Under the pieces are notes generated by a model. That model ran no database searches and had not been told where the DNA came from. It worked only from the letters and a program-made list of their open reading frames with translations. This document shows positions 28,954 to 55,584 of a stretch of DNA of 64,000 nt, in pieces. The stretch is from positions 248,001 through 312,000 of IMG/VR virus record IMGVR_UViG_3300020477_000990. One strand, given 5' to 3'. Each line of letters opens with the position of its first letter. Position 1 is the first letter of the stretch. The translations under genes were made by a program, and so were the position numbers.

Positions 28954-28954
28954 T

Positions 28955-30721: not shown

Positions 30722-30775
30722 ATGTGTAGATTGCTATGATAGGATCTACATATTAAAACTTGCTTAAAGGAGGAG
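30722..30775 (+). ncRNA. tandem ROSE-like RNA thermometer hairpins
   Basis: TTGCT..AGGA occurs twice; the second copy pairs with the SD. Confidence 0.5.
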
Positions 30776-30780
30776 TTAAA

Positions 30781-36442: not shown

Positions 36443-36971
36443 AGAAATTAGTACAAGTATTGATGATAGTTATAGATTAAAGTTAGTTAACTATGCTACC
36501 GAATTAGTATATCATGAAGGTATATCGTCGACATATACGGCAATACATTTTAGTCAAGAATTAGATATTAATAATGAATTATTAAAACCAATAGTTGAAG
36601 ATTTTAAAAAAGCAGTTCCTGATGCATATAACTTAAATATTAGGTTTTTTAAATTTCCACCTTTTGGGTCACAGTTCCCTCATTCAGATTTTAGTATTGC
36701 TACATCAGAAAATGGAAGATCATTTTTAGTACCACTATATCCTGATCCATCTTCAGATTTATATGCTCCATTATTATTTTGGGGTGATGATATTAAAAAA
36801 GTACCATATGATTGGTATAATGAAAGTAAAGCAAAATATGTAGTTCCTAAAATTAAAAATGGATATATAGTTAATATTCATAAAATTCATAGTGTAATGA
36901 ATCATATACCACTACATAGATATAATTTACAAATAAGATTTAATACTAACAATAAGGATATTTTAATATAA
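36420..36971 (+). CDS. 2OG-Fe(II) oxygenase-like protein
   Basis: ATG at 36420; PHSD (HxD)...IHSV...RYNLQIR. Confidence 0.6.
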   Translation: MIHNEYIKEISTSIDDSYRLKLVNYATELVYHEGISSTYTAIHFSQELDINNELLKPIVEDFKKAVPDAYNLNIRFFKFPPFGSQFPHSDFSIATSENGRSFLVPLYPDPSSDLYAPLLFWGDDIKKVPYDWYNESKAKYVVPKIKNGYIVNIHKIHSVMNHIPLHRYNLQIRFNTNNKDILI

Positions 36972-37300
36972 TGGAAAATGAAATAGATAAACCAAAATTA
37001 ACAATATATGCTAAAATTGTTGAAAACTTAAAACAGGTTTATGATCCTGAAATTTCAGTCAATATATATGATTTAGGATTAATATATAATATTGATTTAG
37101 AAAGTTTGCCAAAAGCGACAATAACACATACTCTTACAAGTGCATTTTGTCCAGCGGCAGACCAAATTGTGGCCGATATAAAAGGTGCGGCTGAAACTGT
37201 AGAAGGAGTAGATGCAGTTGAAGTCATTACAACATTTGATCCACCTTTTGGTCCAGATAAAATGTCAGAAGAGGTAAAATTAGCTCTTGGCATTTTCTAA
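36971..37300 (+). CDS. DUF59/SufT/PaaD-like Fe-S assembly protein
   Basis: LKQVYDPEISVNIYDLGLIY, LTSAFCP, FDPP. Confidence 0.9.
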   Translation: MENEIDKPKLTIYAKIVENLKQVYDPEISVNIYDLGLIYNIDLESLPKATITHTLTSAFCPAADQIVADIKGAAETVEGVDAVEVITTFDPPFGPDKMSEEVKLALGIF

Positions 37301-39034: not shown

Positions 39035-39044
39035 GGAGATGAAT

Positions 39045-39629
39045 ATGAATTTAGTACCAATGGTTGTTGAACAATCATCAAGAGGTGAAAGAAGTTATGA
39101 TATTTTTTCACGTTTATTAAAAGAGAGAATTATTTTTATAACAGGACCAATTAACGATACTGTAGCAAGTTTAGTTTGTGCCCAGTTATTATTTTTAGAA
39201 TCCGAGTCATCAGAAAAAGATATCTATATGTATATTAATTCACCAGGTGGATCAGTTACATCAGGTTTGGCTATGTATGACACTATGCAATATGTTAAAC
39301 CAGATATTTCAACAGTAAGTATTGGATTATCAGCAAGTGCTGGTTCTTTATTATTAATGGCAGGAACAAAAGGAAAAAGAATTTCGTTACCTCATAGTAA
39401 AATAATGATACACCAACCATCTGCAGGTTTTTCAGGACAAGCTACAGATATAGAAATTCATGCTAAAGATATATTAGACACTAAAAAACGTTTAAATGAA
39501 TTATACGTAAAACATTGTGGTAAAGATCTTAAAACTGTAACTGATGCTATGGAACGTGATAATTTTATGACACCAGAACAAGCATTAGAATTTGGGTTAA
39601 TAGATAAAATCACTGATAAACGTGTTTAG
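39045..39629 (+). CDS. clpP: ClpP protease
   Basis: ATG at 39045 after AAGGAG; [22 protein letters not shown] (catalytic Ser), MIHQP, ERDNF. Confidence 0.97.
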
Positions 39630-39822
39630 GCTAATTGGTTACGAAGATCCAGAAAAGCACGAAATAATATCTCAAGATGAAACATTAGACAGAACATGGC
39701 TTCCTAGTCATGCAGAAGATATTATTACAGTTACAGATAAGCAATTTGTTTTGGCCAAGTTAAAATATCCAGACGTAGAAATATTAGGTTTTTATTCATA
39801 TCCACTTGATCTTTTGAAATAA
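39622..39822 (+). CDS. small hypothetical protein
   Basis: 66 aa, overlaps the clpP stop. Confidence 0.5.
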
Positions 39823-39841: not shown

Positions 39842-40561
39842 ATGGCGTTAGATATATTTCATTTAAGTTACCAAGAGCCTTATGCGGATAAAACTTGGAA
39901 ATCACTTGTAAAAAGGTTTCCTTATGCTAGGCGTGTAAAAGGAATAAAAGGAATTTTTAATGCACACAAACGATGTGCAGAATTGGCTTATACAAAATCT
40001 TTTTATGTGGTTGATGCAGATGCTATATTAGAACCTGATTTTGATTTTAGCTTTAAGCCAAGTAAATGGGATGAACATTGCACTCATGTTTGGCGTTGTA
40101 AAAATCCAATAAATGATTTAGTATATGGTTATGGTGGTGTTAAATTATTTCCTACACAAACTTGTAGATCTGCAAATGAATGGCGAATAGATTTTACAAC
40201 ATCGGTATCAAATAAACCTGGAGAAAAAGGTGCATTTAAGGCAATGCCAACTATTAGTAATGTTACGGCATTTAATACAGATCCTTTTAATACATTTAAA
40301 TCAGCATTTAGAGAATGTACAAAACTAGCGGCAAAGGTAATTGACAAACAAAAAGATCATGAAACCGAGCAAAGATTAAATGTTTGGTGTAGTGTAGGTT
40401 CAGATAAAGGGTTTGGTGAATATGCAATTGCCGGTGCTATTGCCGGTAGAGAATATGGTGAAGCAAATAAAAATAATATGGAGGCATTAAGTAAAATAAA
40501 TGACTTTGGCTGGCTTGAGCAACAGTTCAACAAAATCCAAATCTCATCTAGAAGTACATGA
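39842..40561 (+). CDS. glycosyltransferase-like (GT-A) protein
   Basis: DIFHLSY.EP, NAHKRCA, YVVDADA (DxD), GYGGVKLF. Confidence 0.6.
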   Translation: MALDIFHLSYQEPYADKTWKSLVKRFPYARRVKGIKGIFNAHKRCAELAYTKSFYVVDADAILEPDFDFSFKPSKWDEHCTHVWRCKNPINDLVYGYGGVKLFPTQTCRSANEWRIDFTTSVSNKPGEKGAFKAMPTISNVTAFNTDPFNTFKSAFRECTKLAAKVIDKQKDHETEQRLNVWCSVGSDKGFGEYAIAGAIAGREYGEANKNNMEALSKINDFGWLEQQFNKIQISSRST

Positions 40562-41399
40562 GTTATTAGATAGATTTGAATTATTGTATGATGATGTAAG
40601 TGAATTAAAAGATCTTAGACGTGCTATTCTTGACAAAGATTTATCTAGCATATTTCGTTTAAGTAAGAATTATGACGGATATTTAATTGATGAACTCCGT
40701 AAATCAGTTTTAGAAGAAAATCAATATTCTATACTTAGGTTATTAAAAATTTATGTAAAGAACAAATCGTTAACAACACTAACAAAAACGATTAAAAATT
40801 TTCCTAAAAGTAATATTAAAGATGCATATTCTAGAGGGCAGTTACACAGTAAAAAATGGTTAGTATCTGAAGTTGAAAAAATAGGAATGCATTTAGGTAC
40901 AGTATTTTTGTGTGCTGGCTGGTATGGAACGTTAGCAACAATGCTTTTTGAATCTGAAAAAATACATTTAGATAAAATAAGAAGTTTTGATATTGATCCT
41001 ACGTGTTGGCAAATTGCAGAGTCAATTAATAAACCTTGGGTTATGACTGAATGGAAATTTAAAGCAACTACACAAGACATACATAGTATTAATTTTAACG
41101 AGTATACGTACAAAACATTAAGATCAGATAAAACAGAAAGAGAATTATTTGATAAGCCAAATACAGTTATTAATACAAGTTGTGAACATATTGAAAATTG
41201 GCAAGAATGGTGGAATAAAATTCCTAATGGAAAATTATGTATTTTACAATCAAATGATTATTTTGAATTACCTGAACATATTAATTGTGTTAAAGATGTT
41301 AGCAATTTTAAATCTATAGCACCAATGGCAACTTACCTTTACACTGGCGAATTAATGTTAGGCAAATATACGAGGTATATGCTTATAGGTATTAAGTAA
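40500..41399 (+). CDS. class I SAM-dependent methyltransferase-like protein
   Basis: FLCAGWYG, SFDIDP, VINTSCEH, LQSNDY. Confidence 0.7.
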   Translation: MTLAGLSNSSTKSKSHLEVHELLDRFELLYDDVSELKDLRRAILDKDLSSIFRLSKNYDGYLIDELRKSVLEENQYSILRLLKIYVKNKSLTTLTKTIKNFPKSNIKDAYSRGQLHSKKWLVSEVEKIGMHLGTVFLCAGWYGTLATMLFESEKIHLDKIRSFDIDPTCWQIAESINKPWVMTEWKFKATTQDIHSINFNEYTYKTLRSDKTERELFDKPNTVINTSCEHIENWQEWWNKIPNGKLCILQSNDYFELPEHINCVKDVSNFKSIAPMATYLYTGELMLGKYTRYMLIGIK

Positions 41400-41656
41400 T
41401 GCCAAAGTATGTATATAGATTAAAGTCTAAAGATCAACCAGTTCTTTTTCGTGAAACAGGAAAGTTCATGGAGATTCCAATGGTAGAAGACGAATTAGAA
41501 GTAGTACATCAAATTGAAGAATGGATAAAAGAAAATTGTTCTCAGTCTGCAAGTATAGAATCCTTTGATAATTATGATTATACAGGTAAGGACAAAATTA
41601 CCATTTACTTTAAAAGTAAAGAAGATTTGCTACTTTTTAAGCTCAAGTTTGAGTAG
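41399..41656 (+). CDS. small hypothetical protein
   Basis: 85 aa, coupled. Confidence 0.55.
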   Translation: MPKYVYRLKSKDQPVLFRETGKFMEIPMVEDELEVVHQIEEWIKENCSQSASIESFDNYDYTGKDKITIYFKSKEDLLLFKLKFE

Positions 41657-41662
41657 TAAATA
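41657..41662 (+). promoter_or_regulatory. late promoter core TAAATA, leaderless geometry
   Basis: 5 nt before the ATG at 41668. Confidence 0.5.
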
Positions 41663-41667
41663 CATAT

Positions 41668-42777
41668 ATGTACAGATATGAAGATATACGAACAGTACAT
41701 TTAGAAATCACAGCGAAATGTCAGGCCGCTTGTTTGCAATGTGATAGAAATGTTAATGGTGGTGAAATAAATCCAAATATTTCACTTGATGAGTTATCTC
41801 TTGAAGATTGCAAAAAAATATTTCCACCTGAATTTGTAAAACAATTAGATAGTTTGTTTATGTGTGGTAATTTAGGTGACCCAGTTATTGCACAAGATTC
41901 ACTTGAAGTAATGGAATATTTACGTAGTCAAAATTCTAATATTTGGTTAAGCATGAATACAAATGCCGGCGCCAAAAAATCAGAGTGGTGGAAAGATTTA
42001 GCAAAAATACTTGGTAAGCAAGGCCATGTAATTTTTAGTTTTGATGGATTAAAAGATACTAATCATTTATATAGGCAAAATGTTAATTGGGATATATGTA
42101 TGGATTCGGCACAGGCGTTTATTGATGCAGGTGGTAGAGCAAGATGGGATTATTTAATATTTGGACATAATCAGCATCAAGTTGAAGATGCAAAAGCATT
42201 ATCAGAACGTATGGGATTTGAAAAATTTATGAGTAAAAAAACTGGTAGATTTTTTAGTAATGTAAAAGCAAAAGGAAAAGAAGAACATCAAGGTGTAAAT
42301 CGTAAAGGTAAACAAACACAAAAACTTACAAAGCCAGATGAAAAATATGTAAACAAAGCTCTTAAGAAAGAAGATTTACTTATAGAAAAATATGGATCTA
42401 TGAATAATTATTATGATAAAGCACATATTAATTGTAAAGTATTAAAAGATATGAATGTATATGTAAGTGCATCAGGACATTTGATGCCTTGTTGTTGGGT
42501 AGCAGGACAAATGTACAAGTGGTGGGAGAAGCCAGGAGAAAATCAAATTTATAGATTTATAGAGCAAGTAGGTGGACTTGATGAGCTATCAGTTTTACAA
42601 CATGGTTTTAAAAAAGTTTTAGAAGGAGACTTTTTTAATAATATAAAAGCAAGTTGGAAAAAAACTTCTTGTAATGGCGGCGATGGAAAATTAAAAGTAT
42701 GTTCTGTTAAATGTGGTACAGAGTTTGATCCATTTGGTGCACAATTTGAAGATAACTTCGTTACAACAGCAAGGTAA
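41668..42777 (+). CDS. radical SAM enzyme with C-terminal SPASM/twitch domain (subfamily A)
   Basis: CQAACLQC, MCGNLGDP, SFDG..TNHLYR, INC...MPCC, CSVKC. Confidence 0.88.
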   Translation: MYRYEDIRTVHLEITAKCQAACLQCDRNVNGGEINPNISLDELSLEDCKKIFPPEFVKQLDSLFMCGNLGDPVIAQDSLEVMEYLRSQNSNIWLSMNTNAGAKKSEWWKDLAKILGKQGHVIFSFDGLKDTNHLYRQNVNWDICMDSAQAFIDAGGRARWDYLIFGHNQHQVEDAKALSERMGFEKFMSKKTGRFFSNVKAKGKEEHQGVNRKGKQTQKLTKPDEKYVNKALKKEDLLIEKYGSMNNYYDKAHINCKVLKDMNVYVSASGHLMPCCWVAGQMYKWWEKPGENQIYRFIEQVGGLDELSVLQHGFKKVLEGDFFNNIKASWKKTSCNGGDGKLKVCSVKCGTEFDPFGAQFEDNFVTTAR

Positions 42778-42786
42778 ATATATAAA

Positions 42787-44256
42787 ATGAGCAATAATAA
42801 ACTACCATCAAAAACGTTTTGTGCGTTACCGTGGATGCATTTATCAACTAGACCAGATGGAAATATGCGAGTATGTTGTACAGCTAACGCAAGTTCAGTA
42901 GGTGCAACTAATGATAAAAAGCATGGTGGACAAGTTGGTATTCTAAAAAAAGATAATGGTGTTCCTGCAAACTTAAATAATTCAGATTTAATGTCATCGT
43001 GGAATAATGATTATATGAAGAACGTTCGTTTACAAATGTTAAACGGAGAAAAACCACCAGCTTGTTTAAAATGTTTTAAAGAAGAAGATGCAGGTCATAA
43101 TTCAAAACGTATGTGGGAAACTGAATATTGGATGAATAGATATTCTTTAGAAGATATGATTGGTGAAACAAAAGAAGACGGTTCTATTCCACCTAAAATT
43201 AGATATATTGATTTGCGTATGGGATCTAAATGTAATTTAAAATGTATTATGTGTAGTCCACATGATTCTTCATTATGGGTCAAAGATTGGTTAGACGTAT
43301 ATCCTACAATTAAAAATCCACAGCTAAAGCAAACAATGGGTTGGGATAATAAAGGTAAAGTACATGGCGCTGGTTATAACTGGCATAAAAATAACGAAGT
43401 ATTTTGGAAGCAGTTATATGAGCAAATACCTCATATGTATCAATTATATTTTGCAGGCGGTGAGTCTACAATTATAGAAGAACATTATACATTATTAGAA
43501 GAAGTTATTAGAAGAGGATATGCTCCTAAAATAGAATTACGTTATAATTCAAATGGTGTTGAAATGCCAGATAGATTATTTGAATTATGGAGTCATTTTA
43601 AAAGAGTGCGTTTTCATTATAGTGTAGATTCAATTGAAGAAATGAATCGTTATATACGTTTTCCTGCAGATTGGGATAATACAGTTAAACAATTTCATTT
43701 GTTAGATAATACAGAAGATAAAGTAGAAGTAACAATTGCCTGTGCAGTACAGGCTTTGAATATACATTATATTCCAGATTTTATTAAATGGAAATGGAAA
43801 CAAAATTTTAAAAAAATAAATGTATGGCCATTTGGAGCAGGTATGTTAAATTATCACTTTGTATATTGGCCTGGGCAATTAAATGTAAAAGCATTGCCAC
43901 AATGGATGAAAAATAAAACAAAAGAAAAATATGAAGCATTTTATCCTTGGTTATTAGAAAATTGGAAACTATCCGGTGCACCAAGTAAAGAAGCATTTAT
44001 GGAAGCAAGTTACGGTATTAAAAGATTAAAAGGAATGATTCAATTTATGATGTCAGAAGATTGGTCAAGACGTATGCCAGAATTTAGAGAATATATTACA
44101 AAATTTGATAAGCAACGTGGCACAGATTTTGCTAAAACTTTTCCGGATATGGCTGATATGTTAGATGAGTCATTAGATTATAGTGTTAAACCAATAACCG
44201 GTGAAAGTATTGATGAAAAAACAGAGAAGGAATTAGAAGATGGCGGAACAATCTGA
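42787..44256 (+). CDS. radical SAM enzyme with N-terminal SPASM/twitch domain (subfamily B)
   Basis: FCALPW...RVCC, CLKC, CNLKCIMC, FAGGE, YNSN. Confidence 0.88.
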   Translation: MSNNKLPSKTFCALPWMHLSTRPDGNMRVCCTANASSVGATNDKKHGGQVGILKKDNGVPANLNNSDLMSSWNNDYMKNVRLQMLNGEKPPACLKCFKEEDAGHNSKRMWETEYWMNRYSLEDMIGETKEDGSIPPKIRYIDLRMGSKCNLKCIMCSPHDSSLWVKDWLDVYPTIKNPQLKQTMGWDNKGKVHGAGYNWHKNNEVFWKQLYEQIPHMYQLYFAGGESTIIEEHYTLLEEVIRRGYAPKIELRYNSNGVEMPDRLFELWSHFKRVRFHYSVDSIEEMNRYIRFPADWDNTVKQFHLLDNTEDKVEVTIACAVQALNIHYIPDFIKWKWKQNFKKINVWPFGAGMLNYHFVYWPGQLNVKALPQWMKNKTKEKYEAFYPWLLENWKLSGAPSKEAFMEASYGIKRLKGMIQFMMSEDWSRRMPEFREYITKFDKQRGTDFAKTFPDMADMLDESLDYSVKPITGESIDEKTEKELEDGGTI

Positions 44257-44806
44257 TTTACATAAAAAGTGGGAAGAAATGAAAGACCACGTTACAAAGC
44301 CACGTAAAGAGTTAGATGGTATGGCTATTTGTCCATTTGCTAAAATGGGATTCAAACGTAATGAAGTTGAAGTTAAATGGGTTAAAAAAGATATGTTTAA
44401 AATTGCCAATGAAGCAATTGAAAATTATCCTGAAGAAAAACAGTTAGTATTATGTATTGGAGATCCAAAAGATTATTCATTAGAAGAATTAGAAAAATGG
44501 GAAAATGAAAACCAAGCAAAAGCAGTTGCAAATGATTTATACATTTATACATCTTATAAGTCAGAAGAAAAACAAGGATCAGTAGGAGTTGAAAAAAATA
44601 CAGATAAACTTATTCCTGGATTAGGTTCTGGTAATAAAGGTTTAGCAATCATACAAATACAAGGGTTAAGTGATTTAAATGAAAAATCTGAATGGGTACA
44701 TAGAAATACAAAGTATTATGATAAATGGAATAAAAAATATTATGATGCTATTGTAAAAAGAAGATATAAAGATAGTAACTATGATAGTGAGGAGTTTGAA
44801 AAATAA
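44240..44806 (+). CDS. hypothetical protein with a CPFAK motif
   Basis: 188 aa inside the radical SAM cluster. Confidence 0.55.
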   Translation: MAEQSDLHKKWEEMKDHVTKPRKELDGMAICPFAKMGFKRNEVEVKWVKKDMFKIANEAIENYPEEKQLVLCIGDPKDYSLEELEKWENENQAKAVANDLYIYTSYKSEEKQGSVGVEKNTDKLIPGLGSGNKGLAIIQIQGLSDLNEKSEWVHRNTKYYDKWNKKYYDAIVKRRYKDSNYDSEEFEK

Positions 44807-45888
44807 TGGTTAATAATTACAATAAATTTTTTAGTGATACGTCTCTAGTAAAGTGCTATTCAGAATTTCAACGATTAGAAGAAGTAATTGTTGGTAGTGC
44901 ATATAAACCAGATTGCTTTGATAGTAGTGAGCAATTTAGCCAAGAAGCCAAAGACTTATTAAAAAGAGTGTTTACAGAAACAGCAGAAGATTTAGAAGTA
45001 CTTGTTAGTATATTAAAAGCTGAAGGCATAATAGTACAACGTCCTAAAGTAATGCAAGATCCACTTGCAAAATATAATATGGGAGAATTTGATATTGAAT
45101 ATGCAAACCAACCTTTGCAACCAAGAGATATATTAGGATTTTATGGTAATAAAATTATTGAAGCATACACAAAAGACAGAACAAGATATTTTGAAAATTG
45201 GTGTTCAAGAGATATATTAAAGCAATATTATTTGCGTGGTGCAGAGTGGATAGCAATGCCACCACCACAATTAAATAAAAAAACATACCAAGATTATTAT
45301 CAAAATAGTGAAGTACTTTTTCATAATGCTAACTTAATTAAATGTGGTAAAGATATATTCCATTCACAATCACATCAAAAAGATCCTGTAAAAGGTAAAG
45401 GTACAGAACAAGGTTTAGAATGGTATAAAAAGCAATTGCCAGAATTTACATTTAATGAAATACCTGTTGGAGGTCATGCTGATGGTAAAATTGCATTAAT
45501 TAAACCAGGTTTATTAGTAACTTGGAAAAAAGAATGGATACCAGAAAAGTTAAAATCATGGGATTGTATTATAACAGAATCAGGAACAAAGTTTCCAGAA
45601 GATTTTAAAAAAACACGTAAAGAACATTTTTATAAAGATTATATTGAAAAATGGTTATCGCATTGGATTGGTTATGTTGATGAAACAGTATTTGATGTTA
45701 ATATGTTGAGTATATCAGAAGATAAAGTTATTTGTACAGGAACAGATAAAGAAGTATTTGCAAAATTAGAACAACACGGAGTAACACCTATATATTGGAA
45801 ATTTAGACATCAATATTTTTGGGATGGCGGAGTACATTGTTTAACAGCAGATGTAAGACGTAAAGGAGAACAGGAAAATTATTTCTAA
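44806..45888 (+). CDS. amidinotransferase (pentein fold; Gly/inosamine-phosphate amidinotransferase-like)
   Basis: LEEVIVG, QPRD, GHADG, DVNML, GGVHCLT catalytic Cys. Confidence 0.85.
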   Translation: MVNNYNKFFSDTSLVKCYSEFQRLEEVIVGSAYKPDCFDSSEQFSQEAKDLLKRVFTETAEDLEVLVSILKAEGIIVQRPKVMQDPLAKYNMGEFDIEYANQPLQPRDILGFYGNKIIEAYTKDRTRYFENWCSRDILKQYYLRGAEWIAMPPPQLNKKTYQDYYQNSEVLFHNANLIKCGKDIFHSQSHQKDPVKGKGTEQGLEWYKKQLPEFTFNEIPVGGHADGKIALIKPGLLVTWKKEWIPEKLKSWDCIITESGTKFPEDFKKTRKEHFYKDYIEKWLSHWIGYVDETVFDVNMLSISEDKVICTGTDKEVFAKLEQHGVTPIYWKFRHQYFWDGGVHCLTADVRRKGEQENYF

Positions 45889-47171
45889 TGGACAATCAAG
45901 CATGGAAGAAACGTGATTGGGATTGGCACAAAACAATCACTAAAAAATGTGTAGCACCTTGGCATAGTTTAACTATCGAATGGGATGGTGAAGTATATGC
46001 TGATGCTGTGGCGTTTAAACCATATGGAAGTATATATGAAAATACTTTAACTGAATTATGGAATTCTCCAAAAGCAGTTAATCTTCGTAAATCATGGAGC
46101 AAAGGATTGCCAGATAATATAATATGTGCTAGTTGTATAAAGAAAGAAGAAACAGTAGGTAGTTCTAGACGACAATACTTTTATAGAAATTTGCCATCTG
46201 AATTATTAAAAACAGCAACATATGATCCAGAGCAAAAACCTAATATATGGTATTTAGAAATTAACTCATCAAATAAATGTAATTTAAAATGTAGAATGTG
46301 TAATGGGCAAGTTTCAAGTACTTGGATTAAAGAAGAAACACAATTAGCAAAAATATCTCCTAGTTGGATGCCAAAAAGAAAAAATGGAAAATACTCTAGA
46401 GTTGATTTTGATGTTATTAAAAATGTTTTAGAAAAAAGAGAATATTTTAAAGATTTGCAATTTTTAAAGTTAACAGGCGGTGAGCCATTAATGGAAGAAC
46501 AAAATTATCAATTAATGGAACAATTTATTGAATGGGATATTGCAAAAAATGTTATGCTTGATATTAACACTAACGGAACATTTATGAATGAAAGATTAAT
46601 AAACATTGCTAAACATTTTAAATTAGTTAAGTTACATATAAGTTTAGAAGGAACAGGAGAGTTATATCAATATATACGTGGTGGAGAAAACTTTACTTTA
46701 GATCAATTAGAAACAAATATAATTGAATTCAACAAGTTACCAAATACAGTAATAATTTATACTGTTACAGTACAAATATATAATATTTTTAATTTATCAG
46801 ATATATGGAATTGGTATTTAAAAATAAGAAAACCAACTAATGAAATTTATTTTAAAAATGTTGTAGTTAATCCTCCACATTTAAATTTTCAAATATTACC
46901 TAATAGTTTAAAGTTAGAAGCATATGAAATAATGAAACAAGCAGATTTACCACAAGGTGAGTATTGGGAATTAGATGATTTTAGTCAAGGTGATATAGGA
47001 TTTAGCAATATTATGAAGAATTTACAGAATCTAAATACATATAACGAGCAACGTTTAAAAGAGTTTGTCCAGTTTACACGTGATATTGATACTATAAGAA
47101 AAACGGATATTAAAAAAATTGTCCCGCAATTAGCAGGATTATTTGAGGAAGTATATGAAGCAAGAGCCTAA
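45888..47171 (+). CDS. radical SAM enzyme, subfamily B
   Basis: CVAPW, CASC, CNLKCRMC, TGGEPL, INTNGT, SLEG...YIRG. Confidence 0.87.
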   Translation: MDNQAWKKRDWDWHKTITKKCVAPWHSLTIEWDGEVYADAVAFKPYGSIYENTLTELWNSPKAVNLRKSWSKGLPDNIICASCIKKEETVGSSRRQYFYRNLPSELLKTATYDPEQKPNIWYLEINSSNKCNLKCRMCNGQVSSTWIKEETQLAKISPSWMPKRKNGKYSRVDFDVIKNVLEKREYFKDLQFLKLTGGEPLMEEQNYQLMEQFIEWDIAKNVMLDINTNGTFMNERLINIAKHFKLVKLHISLEGTGELYQYIRGGENFTLDQLETNIIEFNKLPNTVIIYTVTVQIYNIFNLSDIWNWYLKIRKPTNEIYFKNVVVNPPHLNFQILPNSLKLEAYEIMKQADLPQGEYWELDDFSQGDIGFSNIMKNLQNLNTYNEQRLKEFVQFTRDIDTIRKTDIKKIVPQLAGLFEEVYEARA

Positions 47172-48372
47172 AACATTTTGTATTTTGCCATGGATGCATT
47201 TAGCAACAAATTCTAGTGGAAATTATAGAGTATGTTGTAATTCAACTCCAGGTAAAAATTTTATTTTAGATAAAAATGGTGAGCCTTATAAAATTTATAA
47301 AGCTGATATTAAAGAAATGTGGAACTCTGAAACATATAGAAATTTACGTTTGCAACTACTTAAAGAAGAATATCCAGATATGTGTCAACGTTGCTGGAGA
47401 GAAGAAGCAAGTGATATTAAATCTGCTCGTCAAAGTTTTAACGAAGCATATTCACATTTTATTGATGGAGCATTATCAAATACAGATATAGAAGGTAAAG
47501 CACCATTAAAAGTAGGGTATGTTGATTTACGTTTAGGAAACTTATGTAATTTAAAATGTCGTATGTGTAATCCATGGGCAAGTAACCAATGGACTAAAGA
47601 ATGGAATAAAACAACATCATATGATGGTAAAGATATACCAGAAGATGAACGTACGAGATTAGAGCATATGGATTGGCCCACAAATGAAAAAACGTGGGAA
47701 AACTTAATGCCAATTATAGATTCAGTAGAAGAAATTTACTTAACAGGTGGAGAACCTACATTAGCATTAGAACAATATAAGTTATTTGATAAATGTATTG
47801 AATTAGACAAAGCAAAAGATATTGTATTAAAGTATAATACTAATTTAACTAATATACCACCTAAAATGATTGAGTATTGGAAAAACTTTAAAAAGATTAA
47901 GATTAATGCTTCAATAGATGGGTTTGATGAGCTTAATAGATATATTAGGTATCCAACAAATTGGAAGTCAGTTGATAAAAATCTTAAAATATTTCATGAA
48001 ATAGAAAAAGAAGGTAAAATGAGAGTGCAGATTCATACTACTGTACAATTATATAATATACTTGATATAACAGATTTATTTGAATATGTTGATCAGTTTG
48101 GTTATTTTCCGTATTTAAATATATTAGATCATCCAGATTACTTAAATGTAAGAGTGTTGCCATTGCACCTTAAAGAATGTGTAGCAGAAGAATTACAAAA
48201 GTATATTGATAAGCCAAAAGTAAAAGGGTTAATAACTTATATGATGGACGAAGATTGGTCACAGCATACAGATAAATTTATTGAATATACTAATTGGCTA
48301 GATAAATCACGTAAGCAAAATGTTCTTGATATTGTTCCTGGATTAGAAGACATAATAAATTTAAAAAAATAA
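47155..48372 (+). CDS. radical SAM enzyme, subfamily B
   Basis: ATG at 47155 after GAGGA; FCILPW...RVCC, CQRC, CNLKCRMC, TGGEP, YNTN, SIDG. Confidence 0.88.
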   Translation: MKQEPKTFCILPWMHLATNSSGNYRVCCNSTPGKNFILDKNGEPYKIYKADIKEMWNSETYRNLRLQLLKEEYPDMCQRCWREEASDIKSARQSFNEAYSHFIDGALSNTDIEGKAPLKVGYVDLRLGNLCNLKCRMCNPWASNQWTKEWNKTTSYDGKDIPEDERTRLEHMDWPTNEKTWENLMPIIDSVEEIYLTGGEPTLALEQYKLFDKCIELDKAKDIVLKYNTNLTNIPPKMIEYWKNFKKIKINASIDGFDELNRYIRYPTNWKSVDKNLKIFHEIEKEGKMRVQIHTTVQLYNILDITDLFEYVDQFGYFPYLNILDHPDYLNVRVLPLHLKECVAEELQKYIDKPKVKGLITYMMDEDWSQHTDKFIEYTNWLDKSRKQNVLDIVPGLEDIINLKK

Positions 48373-48762: not shown

Positions 48763-51357
48763 ATGTTTGATTATTTAATTGAAAAAATTAATAATAGTAA
48801 GAAATCTAAAGAACTAGATAGTGTAGTTGACGCATTTACATTTGATAATTTTTTTACAAATCAACATTATAGTAAGTTATCAAAAGATGCTGATAGTTTT
48901 AAAGAATTTGTTCAGGAAGATTCTCCTATTGAAGGTAAAGACCCATCAGTAATATCACTAAATGATTTAACTAACTTAAACAAAGATGATACTTGGTTTT
49001 ACGATCAATTAATTAAAACAGTTAAAAGTCAAAGTTTTAAACGTGCAATTTTAACAAAAGCTGGATTTGATAATAGTGAAGCTGTAAAGTTATCACAATT
49101 AATTGAGTCTACAGCAACTTTTCATACTGATTATACACACCAATCTGATAATAGGCATACTGATCAAAAAAATAATTTTATTAGTATAACATTACAAATA
49201 TATTTGCCAGATAATAATAGTAATAAAAATTATGGAACAGAATTTTATAATAGAAATAATGAAAAAATTTATCAGACTGACTTTTCCCCAAATACTGGAT
49301 ATCTTTTGGTATCAAATAATAATTCGTGGCATAAATCAATAAATGGAGTTTATAGGAAATCAATATTATTTAGATACTATGTTCCTTTTGATTTATATTT
49401 TTCTAGAGAGCATAGTTATCTAGAAAATGAAATGCCGTTGCCAGCTATTTTTAATAGAAATAAACAAAACAATACTTGTTGTATAGTTTGGAATAAAGAT
49501 ATGGGAGTGCCTACTAAAATTACTGATTGGTTTGCAAATATGACGTTTCGTAATTGTATAGATCTTAGGCTTCAAAATTTAATAGTATTAAATAATCCGT
49601 TTAAATATGATATAGAGGCGTTGTCTATATTAAAAGAAATACATAATTTTAAGAAAGCATTTATATTTTTTGGTGGCTTTGTATGGAAAAATAAAGACAT
49701 ATATGAATATGCTGTAAATTTAGATATGAAAGATAATGTTATAGCAGGATTATTAGATGAAGATCAATTTTTGAGGCAATGTGTTATTATTAATTTAGAT
49801 AAGTTAGATGAAATAAATGAAGATGATGCACATGGTGATGGTGGATTTTTTGAAAGGTTTATTGGAAAGCATATTAGTTTAGAAGATATGTGGTTGCCGA
49901 GAACATACTATCACCCAGAAGTTGAAGAAAATCAGATAGTTATAAAATGCTTGTATAATTCAAATGAAATTTCTAATTTTCCTAAATTAGAATATATTAA
50001 AAAATATCAAACTAAAACAACAATACAAGAATATAAAAATGCATTGCAAAAGATAAGTTATGAGGGATACCCCGACGATTTTTCTTATATTGATAATCAA
50101 ATAGATAATGCTAAACCAATAAATGAGTTACAAGGAACAACTAAAGCATTCACATTAGATAATTTTTTTAATGATATTGATTATAAGAAAATATCACAAG
50201 ATGTTATTGATTATATACATTATACTAAAGAAGATGCTCCTATTGAAGGTGAAGAACCGTCAATTATTACTTTTGACAGGTTAGAAAAACAAGATTCATT
50301 TTATAAAAATCTTTGGGCATATTTTAATACACGAAAAATGAAAAGAAAAATTTTAGAAAAATTTGGTTATGGATCTGATATAGAAGAGCTTTTACAATGT
50401 ATGCACCATTCAATATGTTTTCATACAGAATATCCACATCAAATTGATAATGTGCATTCTGATCAGAAATTTACATTATCAACTTTTACATTACAAGTAT
50501 ATTTGCCACAAGATGATAGTATTAAAGAATATGGAACACAATTTGTAAACAATAATGATGATATTATTTTTCATAAACAATTTGTGCCAAATCAAGGGTA
50601 CATGATGGAGTCGAATAATAATTCTTGGCATAAACCAAAAATGGGGGCTGAACGAAAGTCTTTAATAGTTAGGTATCTTATTGAAATTGATTATGAAAAG
50701 GTAAAAAGAGTCTTTAATTATAATAAAGATAATGATACTTGTTATATTATATGGAATAAATCATATAATAAAGTTCATACTAAAATTACTGATTGGTTTA
50801 CAATAGCATCATTGCAGAATGCACAAGAACAAAATATTGAAAATATAGTAGCTACATCAAACATTACTAACACATTGAAGTATTTGCAAAAGCAAGGGTA
50901 TAAAAATGTTGTAGTATGTTATGGTGGGCATATTTTTAGTGATAATAAGATACAACAATATGCTATTTCAATAGAAAATGTTATTGTACAAGATTTAGGA
51001 AAAATTATTGGTAGTAACGTAAGTTATTATGAACCAAAAGCAAGTGCTTCTGCAGAATTGCTTGGGTATATACAACGTAATAAAAGTGTAGAGTATGTGC
51101 AGAGTGAATACCCTGAATTAGCTAAACAGCTACAATACATTAAATCTTATAGAAATAATTACAGTTCTTTTAACAAAATATCAAAATCTATTATTCCTAA
51201 AACTTTTCTTTATTGCAATGATTGTCAAAAACAAACAATTCATCTTGATACATATCCTAGTGGATTTTATTGTAATAGTTGTAAATGTTATAAACAAGAA
51301 GATCCAGGGGCATATCTTAGTCCAACTGATTATGTAGAGTCTGATTTTAAAGATTAA
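48763..51357 (+). CDS. tandemly duplicated [2OG-Fe(II) oxygenase + unknown/GT-like] protein with a C-terminal Zn ribbon
   Basis: two copies of F..DNFF...H(T/S)DQK...TLQ.YLP...SWHK...RKS and TC.I.WNK...KITDWF; CNDC/CNSC at the end. Confidence 0.7.
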   Translation: MFDYLIEKINNSKKSKELDSVVDAFTFDNFFTNQHYSKLSKDADSFKEFVQEDSPIEGKDPSVISLNDLTNLNKDDTWFYDQLIKTVKSQSFKRAILTKAGFDNSEAVKLSQLIESTATFHTDYTHQSDNRHTDQKNNFISITLQIYLPDNNSNKNYGTEFYNRNNEKIYQTDFSPNTGYLLVSNNNSWHKSINGVYRKSILFRYYVPFDLYFSREHSYLENEMPLPAIFNRNKQNNTCCIVWNKDMGVPTKITDWFANMTFRNCIDLRLQNLIVLNNPFKYDIEALSILKEIHNFKKAFIFFGGFVWKNKDIYEYAVNLDMKDNVIAGLLDEDQFLRQCVIINLDKLDEINEDDAHGDGGFFERFIGKHISLEDMWLPRTYYHPEVEENQIVIKCLYNSNEISNFPKLEYIKKYQTKTTIQEYKNALQKISYEGYPDDFSYIDNQIDNAKPINELQGTTKAFTLDNFFNDIDYKKISQDVIDYIHYTKEDAPIEGEEPSIITFDRLEKQDSFYKNLWAYFNTRKMKRKILEKFGYGSDIEELLQCMHHSICFHTEYPHQIDNVHSDQKFTLSTFTLQVYLPQDDSIKEYGTQFVNNNDDIIFHKQFVPNQGYMMESNNNSWHKPKMGAERKSLIVRYLIEIDYEKVKRVFNYNKDNDTCYIIWNKSYNKVHTKITDWFTIASLQNAQEQNIENIVATSNITNTLKYLQKQGYKNVVVCYGGHIFSDNKIQQYAISIENVIVQDLGKIIGSNVSYYEPKASASAELLGYIQRNKSVEYVQSEYPELAKQLQYIKSYRNNYSSFNKISKSIIPKTFLYCNDCQKQTIHLDTYPSGFYCNSCKCYKQEDPGAYLSPTDYVESDFKD

Positions 51358-54225: not shown

Positions 54226-54592
54226 TAAACTTACACAATGGGGATCTTTAATCGGTGTTATTTGTGCTATCGGTGGTGGATTTTATGCTTGGGGTGAATT
54301 TAATACAAGATTAGCAAATATTGAAAGTAGACCAGTTGCTGACATGACATCTATAACTGAAGATGTAGCAAATTTAAAAGTAGATATGGTTGATAGAATT
54401 ACTGCTATTGAAGATAAACTTGAAGCACAATCAGATACAGAATTAGGTACAATCCAAGCCGACATTAGTGAAATAAAAGACTCACTAGTTAAAGCATTAA
54501 AAGATATCGAGATTCAAAGTAAAGTAAATGAATTGCAAGATCAAAAAATTGAACAAGTAAGATTAAAAGCAACAAATCCATTAGCAAATTAA
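54212..54592 (+). CDS. single-TM coiled-coil protein
   Basis: N-terminal TM WGSLIGVICAIGGGFYAWG, then heptads. Confidence 0.65.
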   Translation: MNVINKLTQWGSLIGVICAIGGGFYAWGEFNTRLANIESRPVADMTSITEDVANLKVDMVDRITAIEDKLEAQSDTELGTIQADISEIKDSLVKALKDIEIQSKVNELQDQKIEQVRLKATNPLAN

Positions 54593-55584
54593 ATTTCAGC
54601 GAATGTATGTTGTTTTTTTCCAAAGTGAGAACAACTCTTTTGACATCTTGACAAGAACATAGGATGGTTTTCATTCCAACTATCTTTTAGTATTTGTGAG
54701 AACCATTCATGATCTAATATATCTTGAATATCATGTTCAAGTGAATTATTCCAATTAGAACTATATTTAGAAAATTTTTCAGACATATCATCACGTTTGT
54801 ACCAATTATTATCATACAAATAACAACAAGGCCAAATTTGATAATTAGCACCAAAGTAAATTTCACCTTCATGTATTAGTTTACATTTTATATTTAAATT
54901 TTTAGTTTCGTTTTTAATTTCAGGATGTTGATATTTTTTATTTGTTAAAGATACTTTGTTTATAACTTCTTTAGTTTTTTTATTAACTACAGTATGCGTA
55001 CTTTCTTGTTTCATAGAATAACGTAGTGAAAATTTAAATCCAAGTTTAGTAGATAGTTGTTGTGCTTTTTCTATATCATCGATATTATGATCAAATGGAT
55101 TATAAACCCATTGTCCTTTGCCACCAGCATCAGAATATGCAGTCATATTTTCTACAAGTTTATTCCAATTAACACCAACTCTATAAATGTGATTTGTATT
55201 TTCAAAGCCATCTACACAAAAACGCATATCTAATTTTGGATTGTCTTTGCTAATTGCTCCTAGTTCTGCCCAATATTCTTTTGAACGCAATCCACCGTTA
55301 GTAGAAACAATTATAACCTTTGGATTCATAGATAATGTGTATTCACATATTTCTATAAATTCTTGATTTACTAATGGATCGCCTAAAACACCACAATAAA
55401 AAATTTCTTTGTTTTCTATATATTCTTTTGAGTGTAATACTTTTTTATAGTTTTCTAGAGTAATATCAGCTAATTCTACATCTGGGTTAGTTTCCCCTTT
55501 TAATGTTCTAGCACACCCAGGACATCTAGCATTACATCTAGTGGTTAATTCTACTTCTATTTTCTTAAGATTTTGTACGAGCAT
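54589..55584 (-). CDS. radical SAM enzyme with C-terminal SPASM/twitch domain (subfamily A)
   Basis: ELTTRCNARCPGC, YCGVLGDP, CVDG..TNHIYR, IKC...WPCC, CQKSC. Confidence 0.87.
   Translation of the reverse strand: MLVQNLKKIEVELTTRCNARCPGCARTLKGETNPDVELADITLENYKKVLHSKEYIENKEIFYCGVLGDPLVNQEFIEICEYTLSMNPKVIIVSTNGGLRSKEYWAELGAISKDNPKLDMRFCVDGFENTNHIYRVGVNWNKLVENMTAYSDAGGKGQWVYNPFDHNIDDIEKAQQLSTKLGFKFSLRYSMKQESTHTVVNKKTKEVINKVSLTNKKYQHPEIKNETKNLNIKCKLIHEGEIYFGANYQIWPCCYLYDNNWYKRDDMSEKFSKYSSNWNNSLEHDIQDILDHEWFSQILKDSWNENHPMFLSRCQKSCSHFGKKQHTFAEI

What the first reader, a model, noticed from the sequence alone, without database searches (positions are those of the whole stretch)
39842..48372. Biosynthetic-type cluster: GT, methyltransferase, four radical SAM enzymes and an amidinotransferase
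Seen: nine tightly coupled genes, in order GT-A-like, class I MTase, small ORF, rSAM-A, rSAM-B, CPFAK protein, pentein amidinotransferase, rSAM-B, rSAM-B. Established: this enzyme mix recalls aminocyclitol/aminoglycoside tailoring (BtrN-type twitch dehydrogenases, StrB1 amidinotransferase, GTs, MTases). No precursor peptide, NRPS or exporter is evident. Inference: an undescribed pathway building a guanidinylated, methylated sugar or cyclitol on virion proteins or DNA, or a small molecule. This is the best candidate for a new system in the window.
Basis: partly seen in the sequence, partly recalled or inferred. Interest (0 to 1): 0.88.

Follow-up and report, generated by a model that had tools for sequence, protein, structure and literature searches.

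The report
Phage radical-SAM and amidinotransferase tailoring operon
A giant marine phage carries a tightly packed operon of four iron-sulfur radical enzymes, an arginine-type amidino-group transferase, a sugar transferase and a probable methyltransferase. The same gene blocks recur in hundreds of ocean phages, in Campylobacter phages and in predatory Bdellovibrio-type bacteria, and nobody yet knows what they make.

Summary
Nine same-strand ORFs at 39842-48372 are tightly coupled (gaps -62 to +11 nt). Four carry the CX3CX2C radical SAM motif. Three of these belong to NCBIfam NF033640, the N-terminal-twitch family. One ORF is a full-length amidinotransferase-family protein. One folds as a GT-A glycosyltransferase.

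The order g1-g2-g4-g5-g6-g7-g8-g9 is kept in three related viral contigs. The 85-aa ORF g3 is an orphan.

The operon is a mosaic of three sub-blocks that also occur separately: g1-g2 (fused into one protein elsewhere), g4-g5, and g6-AT-g8 with g9. Bdellovibrionota genomes hold one-to-one counterparts of g4-g9 but not of g1 or g2.

In a sister clade of the transferase, the adjacent radical SAM gene is replaced by a 2-oxoglutarate oxygenase.

The aminoglycoside reading is only partly supported. The radical enzymes are not BtrN-like. The transferase is no closer to StrB1 than to SxtG, HsvA or AGAT, and it has His in place of the triad Asp. No cyclitol synthase or sugar aminotransferase is present.

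My best guess is stepwise radical tailoring of a guanidino-bearing small unit that is then glycosylated and methylated. The product and its destination are unknown. Such cassettes have been noticed in phages since 2010 but never characterised.

The parts
39622..39822 (+). 66-aa ORF between clpP and g1. Possible first gene of the unit; function unknown.
   Evidence: A 66-aa ORF sits at the same place in L005-L008. No family search was run on it.
39842..40561 (+). g1: GT-A-fold nucleotide-sugar transferase-like protein, 239 aa.
   Evidence: No Pfam, NCBIfam or PHROG hit. AlphaFold pLDDT 88.7. Best PDB matches are GT-A glycosyltransferases (SunS, WrtF, ppGalNAc-T, K4CP, TarS) at E 2e-4 to 1e-3, TM 0.3-0.47. 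D58-x-D60 is invariant in 33 homologues. More than 2150 homologues at about 55-65% identity. Fused to g2 in P0362 and P0454.
40500..41399 (+). g2: probable Rossmann-type (class I methyltransferase-like) enzyme, 299 aa. It has two N-terminal copies of a roughly 20-aa repeat. The true start is uncertain because the ORF overlaps g1 by 62 nt.
   Evidence: No Pfam hit. 1587 representative homologues share a roughly 200-aa C-terminal domain behind N-terminal extensions of 0 to more than 1000 aa. The profile search of PDB gives only thermospermine synthase at E 0.23, over the Gly-rich loop and the DID strand. Repeat DLRKAVxExNLHSxFRL.
41399..41656 (+). g3: orphan 85-aa ORF, not a conserved member of the unit.
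   Evidence: Absent from L006-L008, where g2 abuts g4. tblastn finds it only in the window's own contig.
41668..42777 (+). g4: radical SAM enzyme with Cys-rich C-terminal part, 369 aa ('rSAM-A').
   Evidence: CQAACLQC at residue 18. Pfam Radical_SAM 18 bits. phrog_21308 E 1e-19. Counterpart in Bdellovibrionota L085, 335 bits. Paralogues in the window at 2903, 29300 and 54589(-).
42787..44256 (+). g5: N-terminal-twitch radical SAM enzyme, 489 aa.
   Evidence: NF033640 425 bits, cut-off 170. CNLKCIMC at residue 149. N-terminal Cys 12, 30, 31, 93, 96. 81% identical counterpart in L104 and a 695-bit counterpart in L085.
44240..44806 (+). g6: 'CPFA' protein of unknown fold family, 188 aa. It usually sits just upstream of, or within a few genes of, the amidinotransferase.
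   Evidence: Invariant C31-P32-x-A34, Q141, Y159, Y160, W163. 230 homologues, none with a Pfam domain or a name. AlphaFold pLDDT 85.4. No PDB match better than E 0.14; only uncharacterised viral proteins in BFVD. Directly upstream of the AT in Bdellovibrionota L089, L090, L092 and L093.
44806..45888 (+). g7: amidinotransferase-family (pentein) enzyme, 360 aa, of a divergent subfamily.
   Evidence: PDB phmmer: SxtG 1e-32, HsvA 1e-29, AGAT 1e-24, StrB1 3e-23. C345, H224, D226 and D108 are invariant and align with AGAT C407, H303, D305 and D170. AGAT D254 aligns with His172. No Pfam hit at E <= 0.01.
45888..47171 (+). g8: N-terminal-twitch radical SAM enzyme, 427 aa. It is the cognate neighbour of the amidinotransferase, and its start overlaps the g7 stop.
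   Evidence: NF033640 266 bits. CNLKCRMC at residue 131. Only three N-terminal Cys: 21, 80, 83. Its best counterpart in Bdellovibrionota is the gene directly after the AT, 256-310 bits.
47143..48372 (+). g9: N-terminal-twitch radical SAM enzyme, 409 aa from the TTG start. An ATG at 47155 is the more likely start.
   Evidence: NF033640 403 bits. CNLKCRMC at residue 135. N-terminal Cys 13, 31, 32, 81, 84. One-to-one counterparts in Bdellovibrionota at 342-427 bits.
36971..37300 (+). Fe-S assembly protein-like gene upstream. Probable support function for the radical enzymes.
   Evidence: 70% identical to the L104 gene that carries PF01883 FeS_assembly_P. The same upstream order (ClpS ... ALDH-ClpP-g1) is kept.
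54589..55584 (-). Fifth nearby radical SAM gene, a paralogue of g4, on the opposite strand. It lies outside the operon.
   Evidence: Pfam Radical_SAM E 2e-5. Clusters with g4.

Best explanation
The nine ORFs form one operon for multi-step tailoring chemistry. The operon is assembled from three gene blocks that also travel separately.

Block g6-g7-g8 (+g9):
- The amidinotransferase-family enzyme g7 uses Cys345 to take the amidino group from a guanidino donor, by family analogy L-arginine. It passes the group to an amine on an unknown small acceptor.
- The translationally coupled radical SAM enzyme g8 then performs a C-H oxidation or rearrangement on that product. In the sister clade the same slot is filled by a 2-oxoglutarate oxygenase.
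- g9 performs a further, distinct radical step.

Block g4-g5: two more distinct radical steps. Each of g4, g5, g8 and g9 has its own one-to-one counterpart in Bdellovibrionota.

Block g1-g2: a GT-A transferase with a DxD motif and a Rossmann-type, probably SAM-dependent, enzyme. They add and modify a sugar.

The net product would be a guanidino-bearing, oxidised, glycosylated and methylated low-molecular-weight unit. It could be free, or it could be installed on a macromolecule at the phage-host interface.

Shown: gene content, catalytic motifs, folds, synteny, block structure, taxonomic spread and partner replacement.

Inferred: donor, acceptor, order of steps, the chemistry of each radical enzyme, the role of g6, and where the product ends up.
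For: - Tight coupling and motifs.
- Family assignments.
- Gene order is kept in L006-L008 at 77-80% AT identity.
- g1-g2 fusions P0362 and P0454.
- g1-g2-g4-g5 occurs without the AT in L101-L104, in L101-L103 behind a Carbam_trans gene.
- g4, g5, g7, g8 and g9 have one-to-one counterparts in Bdellovibrionota L085, L003 and L004. g6 sits next to the AT in L089-L093.
- The AT tree has a clade of 38 with radical SAM neighbours (support 99/92) and a sister clade of 25 with a 2OG-oxygenase neighbour (100/100).
- All solved relatives of g7 act on small molecules.
- The commonest further partner in related loci is a roughly 300-aa PLP enzyme. It carries the aminotransferase D / SxxK / R signature.
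- Relatives also carry a PNP_UDP_1 nucleosidase-like gene, which would fit removal of 5'-deoxyadenosine.
- Fe-S assembly genes lie upstream.
- GC content matches the flanks.
Against: - No product, donor or acceptor is shown.
- g7 has His in place of the triad Asp254 and fails the Pfam model, so it may not be a transferase at all.
- The window lacks the PLP enzyme found in most related loci, so the acceptor amine must come from elsewhere.
- g1 and g2 are absent from Bdellovibrionota and from most AT loci, so they may serve a separate function that merely neighbours the rest.
- The GT-A fold matches are modest (TM < 0.5).
- The g2 fold is unproven and g6 is unexplained.
- Most characterised SPASM/twitch radical SAM enzymes act on peptides, which favours a protein substrate.
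Confidence: 0.4

Rival explanations
1. Post-translational modification of a phage protein, for example a tail fibre or another virion-surface protein, or of a host protein. The twitch radical SAM enzymes would install cross-links, epimerisations or oxidations. The pentein would alter Arg, Lys or Orn side chains. GT-A and g2 would glycosylate and methylate the protein.
For: - Most characterised SPASM/twitch enzymes in the NCBIfam hit lists are peptide maturases.
- The best fold matches of g1 include the peptide and protein glycosyltransferases SunS and ppGalNAc-T.
- Related loci carry Asp_Arg_Hydrox and prolyl-hydroxylase-type 2OG oxygenases.
- In T4-like marine phages the AT-oxygenase pair lies between the tail sheath and tube genes and the large terminase.
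- In cyanophage S-SCSM2R the AT homologue and a prolyl dihydroxylase were detected in purified virions (PMC12801897).
- Radical SAM cassettes sit in the hypervariable host-recognition cluster of pelagimyophages (PMC7029224).
Against: - There is no conserved small ORF or candidate substrate next to the enzymes; g3 is an orphan.
- No solved relative of g7, and to my knowledge no characterised amidinotransferase, acts on a protein.
- The frequent PLP aminotransferase-like partner does not fit a protein substrate.
- No RRE-type peptide-binding domain was detected by Pfam.
Confidence: 0.25
2. Hypermodification of phage DNA or of a nucleotide or tRNA base. A positively charged guanidino-containing side chain would be built on a base, then glycosylated and methylated. 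This would protect against restriction or help packaging.
For: - From established knowledge, phage base hypermodification pathways combine radical SAM, PLP, glycosyltransferase and methyltransferase enzymes.
- The AT lies next to the terminase in one phage group.
- The genome encodes many tRNAs and nucleotide-metabolism genes.
Against: - No hydroxymethylase, DNA kinase, transglycosylase or DNA-binding domain was found in the operon or among the window ORFs scanned.
- CP220 DNA is fully modified with 7-amido-7-deazaguanine by a different, identified gene set (10.1101/2023.04.13.536721).
- CP220 and CPt10 carry unrelated versions of the radical SAM/AT module (PMC2853527).
Confidence: 0.12
3. Modification of the host cell envelope during infection, for example the Kdo, lipid A or O-antigen part of LPS, or peptidoglycan. 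The purpose would be to block superinfection or to help entry and exit. Predatory Bdellovibrionota would share the system because they also remodel prey envelopes.
For: - In S-SCSM2R the AT lies beside kdsA, kdsB and a glycosyltransferase.
- Partners give weak hits to Kdo_hydroxy and to the Asp_Arg_Hydrox family, which to my knowledge includes the lipid A hydroxylase LpxO.
- Cellular homologues occur almost only in Bdellovibrionota.
- Pelagimyophage authors place glycosyltransferase and LPS genes together with radical SAM cassettes.
Against: - The Kdo_hydroxy hit is far below threshold (E 0.0025, 17.5 bits against a cut-off of 25).
- No lipid-linked or membrane-bound enzyme and no flippase lies in the operon.
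- All nine products look cytoplasmic.
Confidence: 0.13
4. The genes are not one functional unit. They are several independent accessory genes (g1-g2; g4-g5; g6-g9) that merely lie side by side in a plastic region of a genome rich in radical SAM genes.
For: - The three blocks occur separately in other genomes.
- The window holds eight radical SAM genes scattered over 64 kb.
- g3 is an insertion.
Against: - Overlapping or near-abutting reading frames run through the whole stretch.
- The full order is kept in three relatives at about 77-80% identity.
- g4-g5 occurs with g1-g2 in some genomes and with the AT block in others, which links all three blocks.
Confidence: 0.1

Closest known systems
Radical SAM / putative glycine amidinotransferase module of Campylobacter phages CP220 and CPt10 (Timms et al. 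2010, PMC2853527)
   Same: A same-strand run of about five radical SAM genes, one amidinotransferase-family gene with a small unknown gene just upstream, and GT-A-superfamily genes. It lies in a replaceable region of a T4-like genome, and its function is unknown.
   Different: - The AT is only 27% identical, and CP220 keeps Asp at the triad position.
- CP220 has no N-terminal-twitch (NF033640-type) paralogues detectable with g5, g8 or g9, and no g1, g2 or g6 homologues at E 1e-4.
- Host and habitat differ.
Radical SAM cassettes of marine T4-like phages (Nishimura 2017, PMC5332604; Zaragoza-Solas 2020, PMC7029224)
   Same: Marine myovirus genomes with up to 12 radical SAM genes, Fe-S assembly genes and ClpP. 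The cassettes are variable and lie next to glycosyltransferases in the host-recognition region.
   Different: In the passages I read, those papers only list the genes. They describe no amidinotransferase, no block structure, no Bdellovibrionota link and no oxygenase replacement. The present genome is a 328-kb phage contig.
Aminoglycoside / aminocyclitol pathways (StrB1 amidinotransferase, BtrN radical SAM dehydrogenase, glycosyltransferases, methyltransferases)
   Same: The general enzyme mix is an amidinotransferase family member, twitch-type radical SAM enzymes, a glycosyltransferase and a methyltransferase-like enzyme.
   Different: - There is no cyclitol synthase and no DegT-type sugar aminotransferase.
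- The twitch domain is N-terminal, and the solved-structure searches run with g4 and g9 found no radical SAM enzyme, BtrN included.
- The AT is not specifically StrB1-like.
- No resistance or export gene is present.
Arginine-derived non-proteinogenic amino acid pathways (capreomycidine VioC/VioD, enduracididine MppP/Q/R). Named from established knowledge, not tested by sequence here.
   Same: In related loci the cassette 'AT - 2OG oxygenase - class I/II PLP enzyme' has the same logic: oxidise a guanidino amino acid, then process it with a PLP enzyme.
   Different: Those pathways have no amidinotransferase and no radical SAM enzymes, and they feed NRPS assembly lines. The window itself lacks the PLP enzyme and any peptide synthetase.
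Chlorovirus PBCV-1 A064R-type viral glycan tailoring proteins (glycosyltransferase domains fused to a methyltransferase). From established knowledge.
   Same: Relatives of g1 and g2 are fused in the order GT-A, GT-A, methyltransferase-like domain (P0454, P0362). This is the same architecture idea: add a sugar, then methylate it.
   Different: No sequence or fold comparison with A064R was made. The hosts are bacterial, and the association with radical SAM genes has no counterpart in chloroviruses.

Membership tests
Amidinotransferase family (AGAT / StrB1 / SxtG / HsvA; pentein fold) | Full-length sequence homology to solved members | tested here: met
   phmmer E 1e-32 to 3e-23 over residues ~10-360. 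The family profile gives E 6e-50 to 1e-40.
Amidinotransferase family (AGAT / StrB1 / SxtG / HsvA; pentein fold) | Catalytic Cys (AGAT C407), His (H303) and the guanidino-binding Asp pair (D170, D305) | tested here: met
   C345, H224, D108 and D226 are invariant in 23 family members and align with these residues.
Amidinotransferase family (AGAT / StrB1 / SxtG / HsvA; pentein fold) | Third triad residue Asp (AGAT D254, in the FDAADF motif) | tested here: not met
   It aligns with His172 (FHNAN), and His is the rule in this subfamily. CP220 keeps Asp.
Amidinotransferase family (AGAT / StrB1 / SxtG / HsvA; pentein fold) | Reaches the curated Pfam model PF02274 | tested here: not met
   No Pfam family at E <= 0.01. 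Only 1 of 120 listed homologues carries PF02274.
Amidinotransferase family (AGAT / StrB1 / SxtG / HsvA; pentein fold) | Arginine-dependent amidino transfer activity | not testable with these tools
   This needs an enzyme assay.
NF033640 N-terminal twitch radical SAM proteins | Score above the curated cut-off (170 bits) | tested here: met
   g5 425, g8 266 and g9 403 bits. g4 reaches only 39 bits and is not a member.
NF033640 N-terminal twitch radical SAM proteins | CX3CX2C radical SAM motif, plus an N-terminal Cys set for an auxiliary cluster | tested here: met
   The motif is at residues 149, 131 and 135. There are five N-terminal Cys in g5 and g9 but only three in g8.
BtrN-type twitch radical SAM dehydrogenases | Twitch domain C-terminal to the radical SAM core, and detectable similarity to BtrN | tested here: not met
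   The SPASM/twitch match lies at residues 12-96, before the core. g4 and g9 find no solved radical SAM structure at E <= 0.1. g5 and g8 were not searched against solved structures.
GT-A glycosyltransferases | GT-A (nucleotide-diphospho-sugar transferase) fold | tested here: met
   AlphaFold pLDDT 88.7. 17 PDB matches at E <= 1e-3, 15 of them GT-A glycosyltransferase chains and two sugar nucleotidyltransferases of the same fold class. TM is only 0.3-0.47.
GT-A glycosyltransferases | DxD metal/nucleotide-sugar motif | tested here: met
   D58-A-D60 is invariant in 33 homologues, at the end of strand 53-58.
GT-A glycosyltransferases | Membership of a curated GT sequence family | tested here: not met
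   No Pfam, NCBIfam or PHROG hit, and no PDB profile hit at E <= 10.
Class I SAM-dependent methyltransferases (g2) | Rossmann fold with a Gly-rich SAM loop and an acidic residue after strand 2 | tested here: inconclusive
   The motifs VFLCAGWYG and SFDID are present. The only profile hit is thermospermine synthase at E 0.23 over these motifs. No Pfam hit.
Aminoglycoside / aminocyclitol gene clusters | Cyclitol-forming enzyme (2-deoxy-scyllo-inosose or inositol-phosphate synthase) and a sugar aminotransferase | tested here: not met
   None of the nine products matches such families in Pfam or NCBIfam. None was seen among the neighbours that were scanned.
RiPP radical SAM/SPASM maturase systems | Conserved precursor peptide gene next to the maturases | tested here: not met
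   The only small ORF, g3, is absent from the closest relatives. No small ORF family tracks the AT or radical SAM genes across 100 loci.
CP220/CPt10-type phage radical SAM-amidinotransferase module | Several radical SAM genes plus one amidinotransferase-family gene plus GT-A-like genes in one same-strand run in a phage | tested here: met
   CP220 gp080-gp089 has this composition. At the sequence level only g7 (74 bits) and g4 (50 bits) find counterparts there.

The most novel reading that the evidence does not exclude
The cassette is the visible part of an undescribed radical-SAM pathway shared by virulent phages and predatory Bdellovibrionota. It would install a new guanidino-containing modification on receptor-binding fibres, or on the prey/host envelope. 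Interchangeable radical SAM or 2-oxoglutarate oxygenase versions and hypervariable paralogue sets would tune host range. That would be a chemical layer of the host-recognition arms race that has not been seen before.
Probability: 0.15. Interest if true: 0.9.

Novelty: new variant of a known kind. Interest (0 to 1): 0.62.

Why it matters
Radical SAM genes are rare in most phages, yet this phage has eight in 64 kb. Related cassettes occur in more than 550 viral contigs, and g1 alone has more than 2000 homologues, so the unknown chemistry is abundant in the ocean.

This work gives three concrete handles for experiments:
- A minimal conserved core, g4-g9, with one-to-one counterparts in Bdellovibrionota.
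- A natural swap between a radical SAM enzyme and an oxygenase next to the amidinotransferase, which points to the step that follows amidino transfer.
- Gene fusions that tie the glycosyltransferase to the methyltransferase-like enzyme.

Finding the product would assign functions to several large protein families that have none: g1, g2, g6 and NF033640. It could also explain a hypervariable region that others have linked to host recognition.

Tried and rejected
- Nucleotide search of the operon against 50,697 phage records found nothing.
- g9 and g4 against solved structures gave nothing useful.
- Profiles of g1 and g2 against solved structures gave nothing for g1 and only E 0.23 for g2.
- Fold search of g6 against PDB gave no match. 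Against viral models it found only its own uncharacterised family.
- The Rfam scan found tRNAs only, with no guanidine or SAM riboswitch.
- The promoter and terminator scan gave counts equal to shuffled sequence. The good -35/-10 matches just before g1 and just after g9 cannot be given weight.
- I rejected g3 as a precursor peptide because it is an orphan.
- My guess that g6 has a thioredoxin-like fold, from its CP[FY]A motif, found no support in the fold search.
- I considered a link to the 7-deazaguanine pathway, because relatives carry PP-loop and QueE-like weak hits. I dropped it because CP220's DNA modification is explained by other genes.
- Literature searches found no functional study of these cassettes.
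It was rerun without that row.

Full report
**What is there**

The window matches viral contig IMGVR_UViG_3300020477_000990 (328 kb) at 100% over the amidinotransferase gene. It has about 30% GC, and nearly all genes lie on one strand.

At 39842-48372 there are nine + strand ORFs. Their junctions are -62, -1, +11, +9, -17, -1, -1 and -29 nt. GC content in the cluster (0.28-0.31) is the same as in the flanks.

**Gene identities**

- g4 (41668), g5 (42787), g8 (45888) and g9 (47143) each carry one CX3CX2C motif.
- g5, g8 and g9 score 425, 266 and 403 bits against NCBIfam NF033640, 'twitch domain-containing radical SAM protein', cut-off 170. Their SPASM/twitch match lies N-terminal to the radical SAM core.
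- g4 is a different, weaker radical SAM type. Its matches are Pfam 18 bits and phrog_21308 E 1e-19. It has a Cys-rich C-terminal part.
- g7 has no Pfam hit. It aligns over its full length with solved amidinotransferases: SxtG 1e-32, HsvA 1e-29, AGAT 1e-24 and StrB1 3e-23.
- In a 23-member alignment of g7 relatives, C345, H224, D226 and D108 are invariant. They align with AGAT C407, H303, D305 and D170. The third triad residue, AGAT D254, aligns with His172 (motif FHNAN) in the window protein, and His is the rule across the subfamily.
- g1 has no family hit. Its AlphaFold model (pLDDT 88.7) matches GT-A glycosyltransferases at E 2e-4 to 1e-3, with modest TM of 0.3-0.47. D58-x-D60 is invariant.
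- g2 has no family hit. A profile of 60 homologues reaches only thermospermine synthase, at E 0.23, over a Gly-rich loop and a 'DID' strand. The methyltransferase-like fold is therefore plausible but unproven.
- g6 belongs to a family of about 230 unnamed proteins with an invariant Cys-Pro-x-Ala. Its model is confident (pLDDT 85.4), but it has no relative in the PDB.
- g3 is an orphan. In the three closest relatives g2 abuts g4.

**Conservation and block structure**

Three viral contigs (L006-L008, AT identity 77-80%) keep the order ClpP, 66-aa ORF, g1, g2, g4, g5, g6, g7, g8, g9. Beyond these, the operon breaks into blocks.

- g1 and g2 are fused into single proteins elsewhere. P0454 is GT-A, GT-A, g2 domain. 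P0362 has the same parts plus repeats.
- g1-g2-g4-g5 occurs without any AT in L101-L104. In L101-L103 it lies behind a NodU/CmcH-type carbamoyltransferase (Pfam Carbam_trans_N/C).
- In L104 this block follows the same upstream run as in the window: DnaK, HSP20, MotA/ExbB, ClpS, Fe-S assembly, ALDH, ClpP.
- The g1 family has more than 2150 members at 55-65% identity. The g2 domain has 1587 representative clusters.
- The AT family is found in more than 552 viral loci.

Among 185,579 species genomes, the AT family occurs almost only in Bdellovibrionota (9 of 16 loci, 42-51% identity). There it lies on contigs of up to 3 Mb, amid 5-10 radical SAM genes and Asp_Arg_Hydrox oxygenases.

- In those genomes g4, g5, g8 and g9 each have a distinct best counterpart. 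Examples from L085 are g5 695 bits, g4 335, g9 342 and g8 286.
- The g8 counterpart is in most loci (for example L003, L004, L088, L089) the gene right after the AT. In L085 it lies about 8 kb downstream.
- g6 is often the gene right before the AT.
- g1 and g2 are absent.

The four radical enzymes are therefore old, non-redundant paralogues. g4-g9 is the conserved core.

**Partner replacement**

In a maximum-likelihood tree of 88 AT sequences, the window falls in a clade of 38 (support 99/92). Every locus in that clade has radical SAM genes, and 33 have one adjacent.

The sister clade of 25 (100/100) has a 2-oxoglutarate oxygenase adjacent in 18. The neighbour labels need 14 changes on the tree, against 43 when shuffled (0 of 200 shuffles as low).

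In that sister clade the AT-oxygenase pair lies between the tail sheath/tube genes and the large terminase of T4-like marine phages.

I read this as a non-homologous replacement of the enzyme that acts after the AT. That would mean the step is a C-H oxidation. This is an inference.

**Other partners in related loci (not in the window)**

- A roughly 300-aa protein occurs in 41 of 100 loci, within three genes of the AT in 35. Its invariant D, S-x-x-K and R align with the PLP-binding residues of class I/II aminotransferases (E 0.01).
- Further radical SAM types occur.
- There are weak Kdo-hydroxylase-like and Asp_Arg_Hydrox oxygenase matches.
- There is a PNP_UDP_1 nucleosidase-like protein, which could plausibly remove 5'-deoxyadenosine.
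- There is a stand-alone SPASM domain.

**What it most likely does**

All solved relatives of g7 act on small molecules. The commonest extra partner looks like an amino-acid-type PLP enzyme. The GT-A/g2 pair and the carbamoyltransferase neighbour point to sugar tailoring.

I therefore favour stepwise synthesis of a guanidino-bearing, oxidised small unit that is glycosylated and methylated in this phage (confidence 0.4). Its destination is unknown.

A protein target is the main rival (0.25). Its support is as follows:
- Characterised SPASM/twitch enzymes have peptide maturase precedents.
- Protein-type hydroxylases occur in related loci.
- The AT sits inside a structural module in T4-like phages.
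- The S-SCSM2R homologue was detected in virions (PMC12801897).
- Radical SAM cassettes lie in the pelagimyophage host-recognition cluster (PMC7029224).

Against it, there is no conserved substrate ORF, and no amidinotransferase is known to act on a protein.

Envelope modification (0.13) and DNA or RNA base modification (0.12) remain possible. The DNA reading is weakened because CP220's complete 7-amido-7-deazaguanine substitution is explained by other genes. In addition, CP220 and CPt10 carry unrelated versions of the module.

The gene list is right. The aminoglycoside analogy is loose:
- The radical enzymes are not BtrN-like.
- The AT is not specifically StrB1-like and has an altered triad.
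- There is no cyclitol synthase or sugar aminotransferase.

The statement that no exporter is evident holds. An SbmA/BacA-like membrane protein does lie 3.4 kb upstream.

**Novelty**

Radical SAM plus amidinotransferase modules were reported in CP220/CPt10 in 2010 as an interchangeable module of unknown role (PMC2853527). Radical-SAM-rich marine T4-like phages were noted in 2017 and 2020 (PMC5332604, PMC7029224). No function has been assigned in any paper I could find.

This locus is a new variant of that uncharacterised kind. It uses N-terminal-twitch paralogues and adds a GT-A/g2 head and a g6 partner.

New from this analysis:
- The block structure.
- The Bdellovibrionota counterparts.
- The radical SAM versus oxygenase clade split.
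- The g1-g2 fusions.
- The Asp-to-His change in the AT subfamily.

Noticed in passing
window 2903-3988, 24569-25258, 29300-30352, 54589-55584(-), plus the four in the operon: There are eight radical SAM genes in 64 kb. Three of the extra ones are paralogues of g4.
   Followed up: partly
window 25525-26796, 30760-31224, 31253-33145, 35108-35431, 39018-39629: The phage encodes its own chaperone and protease set: ClpX, an HSP20-like protein, DnaK (about 66% identical to bacterial DnaK), a ClpS-like protein and ClpP. The same run is kept in relative L104.
   Followed up: partly
window 35447-36442: An SbmA/BacA-family inner-membrane transporter-like protein (452 bits), unusual for a phage. It lies between the ClpS-like gene (35108-35431) and the Fe-S assembly gene (36971-37300), the interval in which relative L104 has a NifU gene.
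   Followed up: no
window 37544-39034: A full-length aldehyde dehydrogenase (402 bits) lies directly upstream of ClpP and the operon. This position is conserved in L104. It could belong to the pathway.
   Followed up: no
window 40500-40811 (N-terminal part of g2) and relatives P0366, P0362, L019: A well-conserved repeat of about 20 aa, DLRKAVxExNLHSxFRL. There are two copies here and up to nine or more in relatives. It occurs in 18 of 150 representative homologues. Other homologues have different N-terminal extensions of up to 1000 aa. Its role is unknown; docking, spacing or substrate are possibilities.
   Followed up: partly
window 48763-51357: An 864-aa protein made of two copies of a roughly 430-aa unit. 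It has a weak 2OG-oxygenase match and a Cys-rich C-terminal end. It lies just after the operon, a 73-aa membrane ORF and tRNA-Glu. It is not conserved at this place in L006-L008.
   Followed up: no
window 51445-52395 and 52399-54225: Two proteins have signal-peptide-like N-termini and long Thr/Ser/Asn-rich or Glu/Thr-rich tracts followed by coiled-coil-like ends. The region has unusual base skew: AT skew 0.33 and GC 0.36.
   Followed up: no
window 18007-20076; tRNAs at 13721, 28800-29031, 48664, 62507: An EF-G-like translation factor (phrog_6880) and six tRNA genes. One of them, tRNA-Glu, lies right after the operon.
   Followed up: no
window 8707-12168, 13831-14454, 27682-28476, 56843-58153, 60209-62209: Metabolic genes: ribonucleotide reductase large and small subunits, a nitroreductase, NAD synthase, an ATP-dependent DNA ligase, a GMP reductase/IMPDH-family protein and PRPP synthetase.
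   Followed up: no
loci L085-L093, L003, L004 (Bdellovibrionota): Predatory-bacterium genomes carry chromosomal arrays of up to about ten N-terminal-twitch radical SAM paralogues around the AT. In the AT tree their sequences interleave with those of phages. The direction of transfer is unresolved.
   Followed up: partly
locus L106 (Ralstonia phage RsoM2USA, 344 kb), 7574-10373: A cultured jumbo phage has a radical SAM gene, a g1 homologue (42% identity) and a weak g2 homologue side by side. All are annotated as hypothetical. It could serve as an isolate for study.
   Followed up: no
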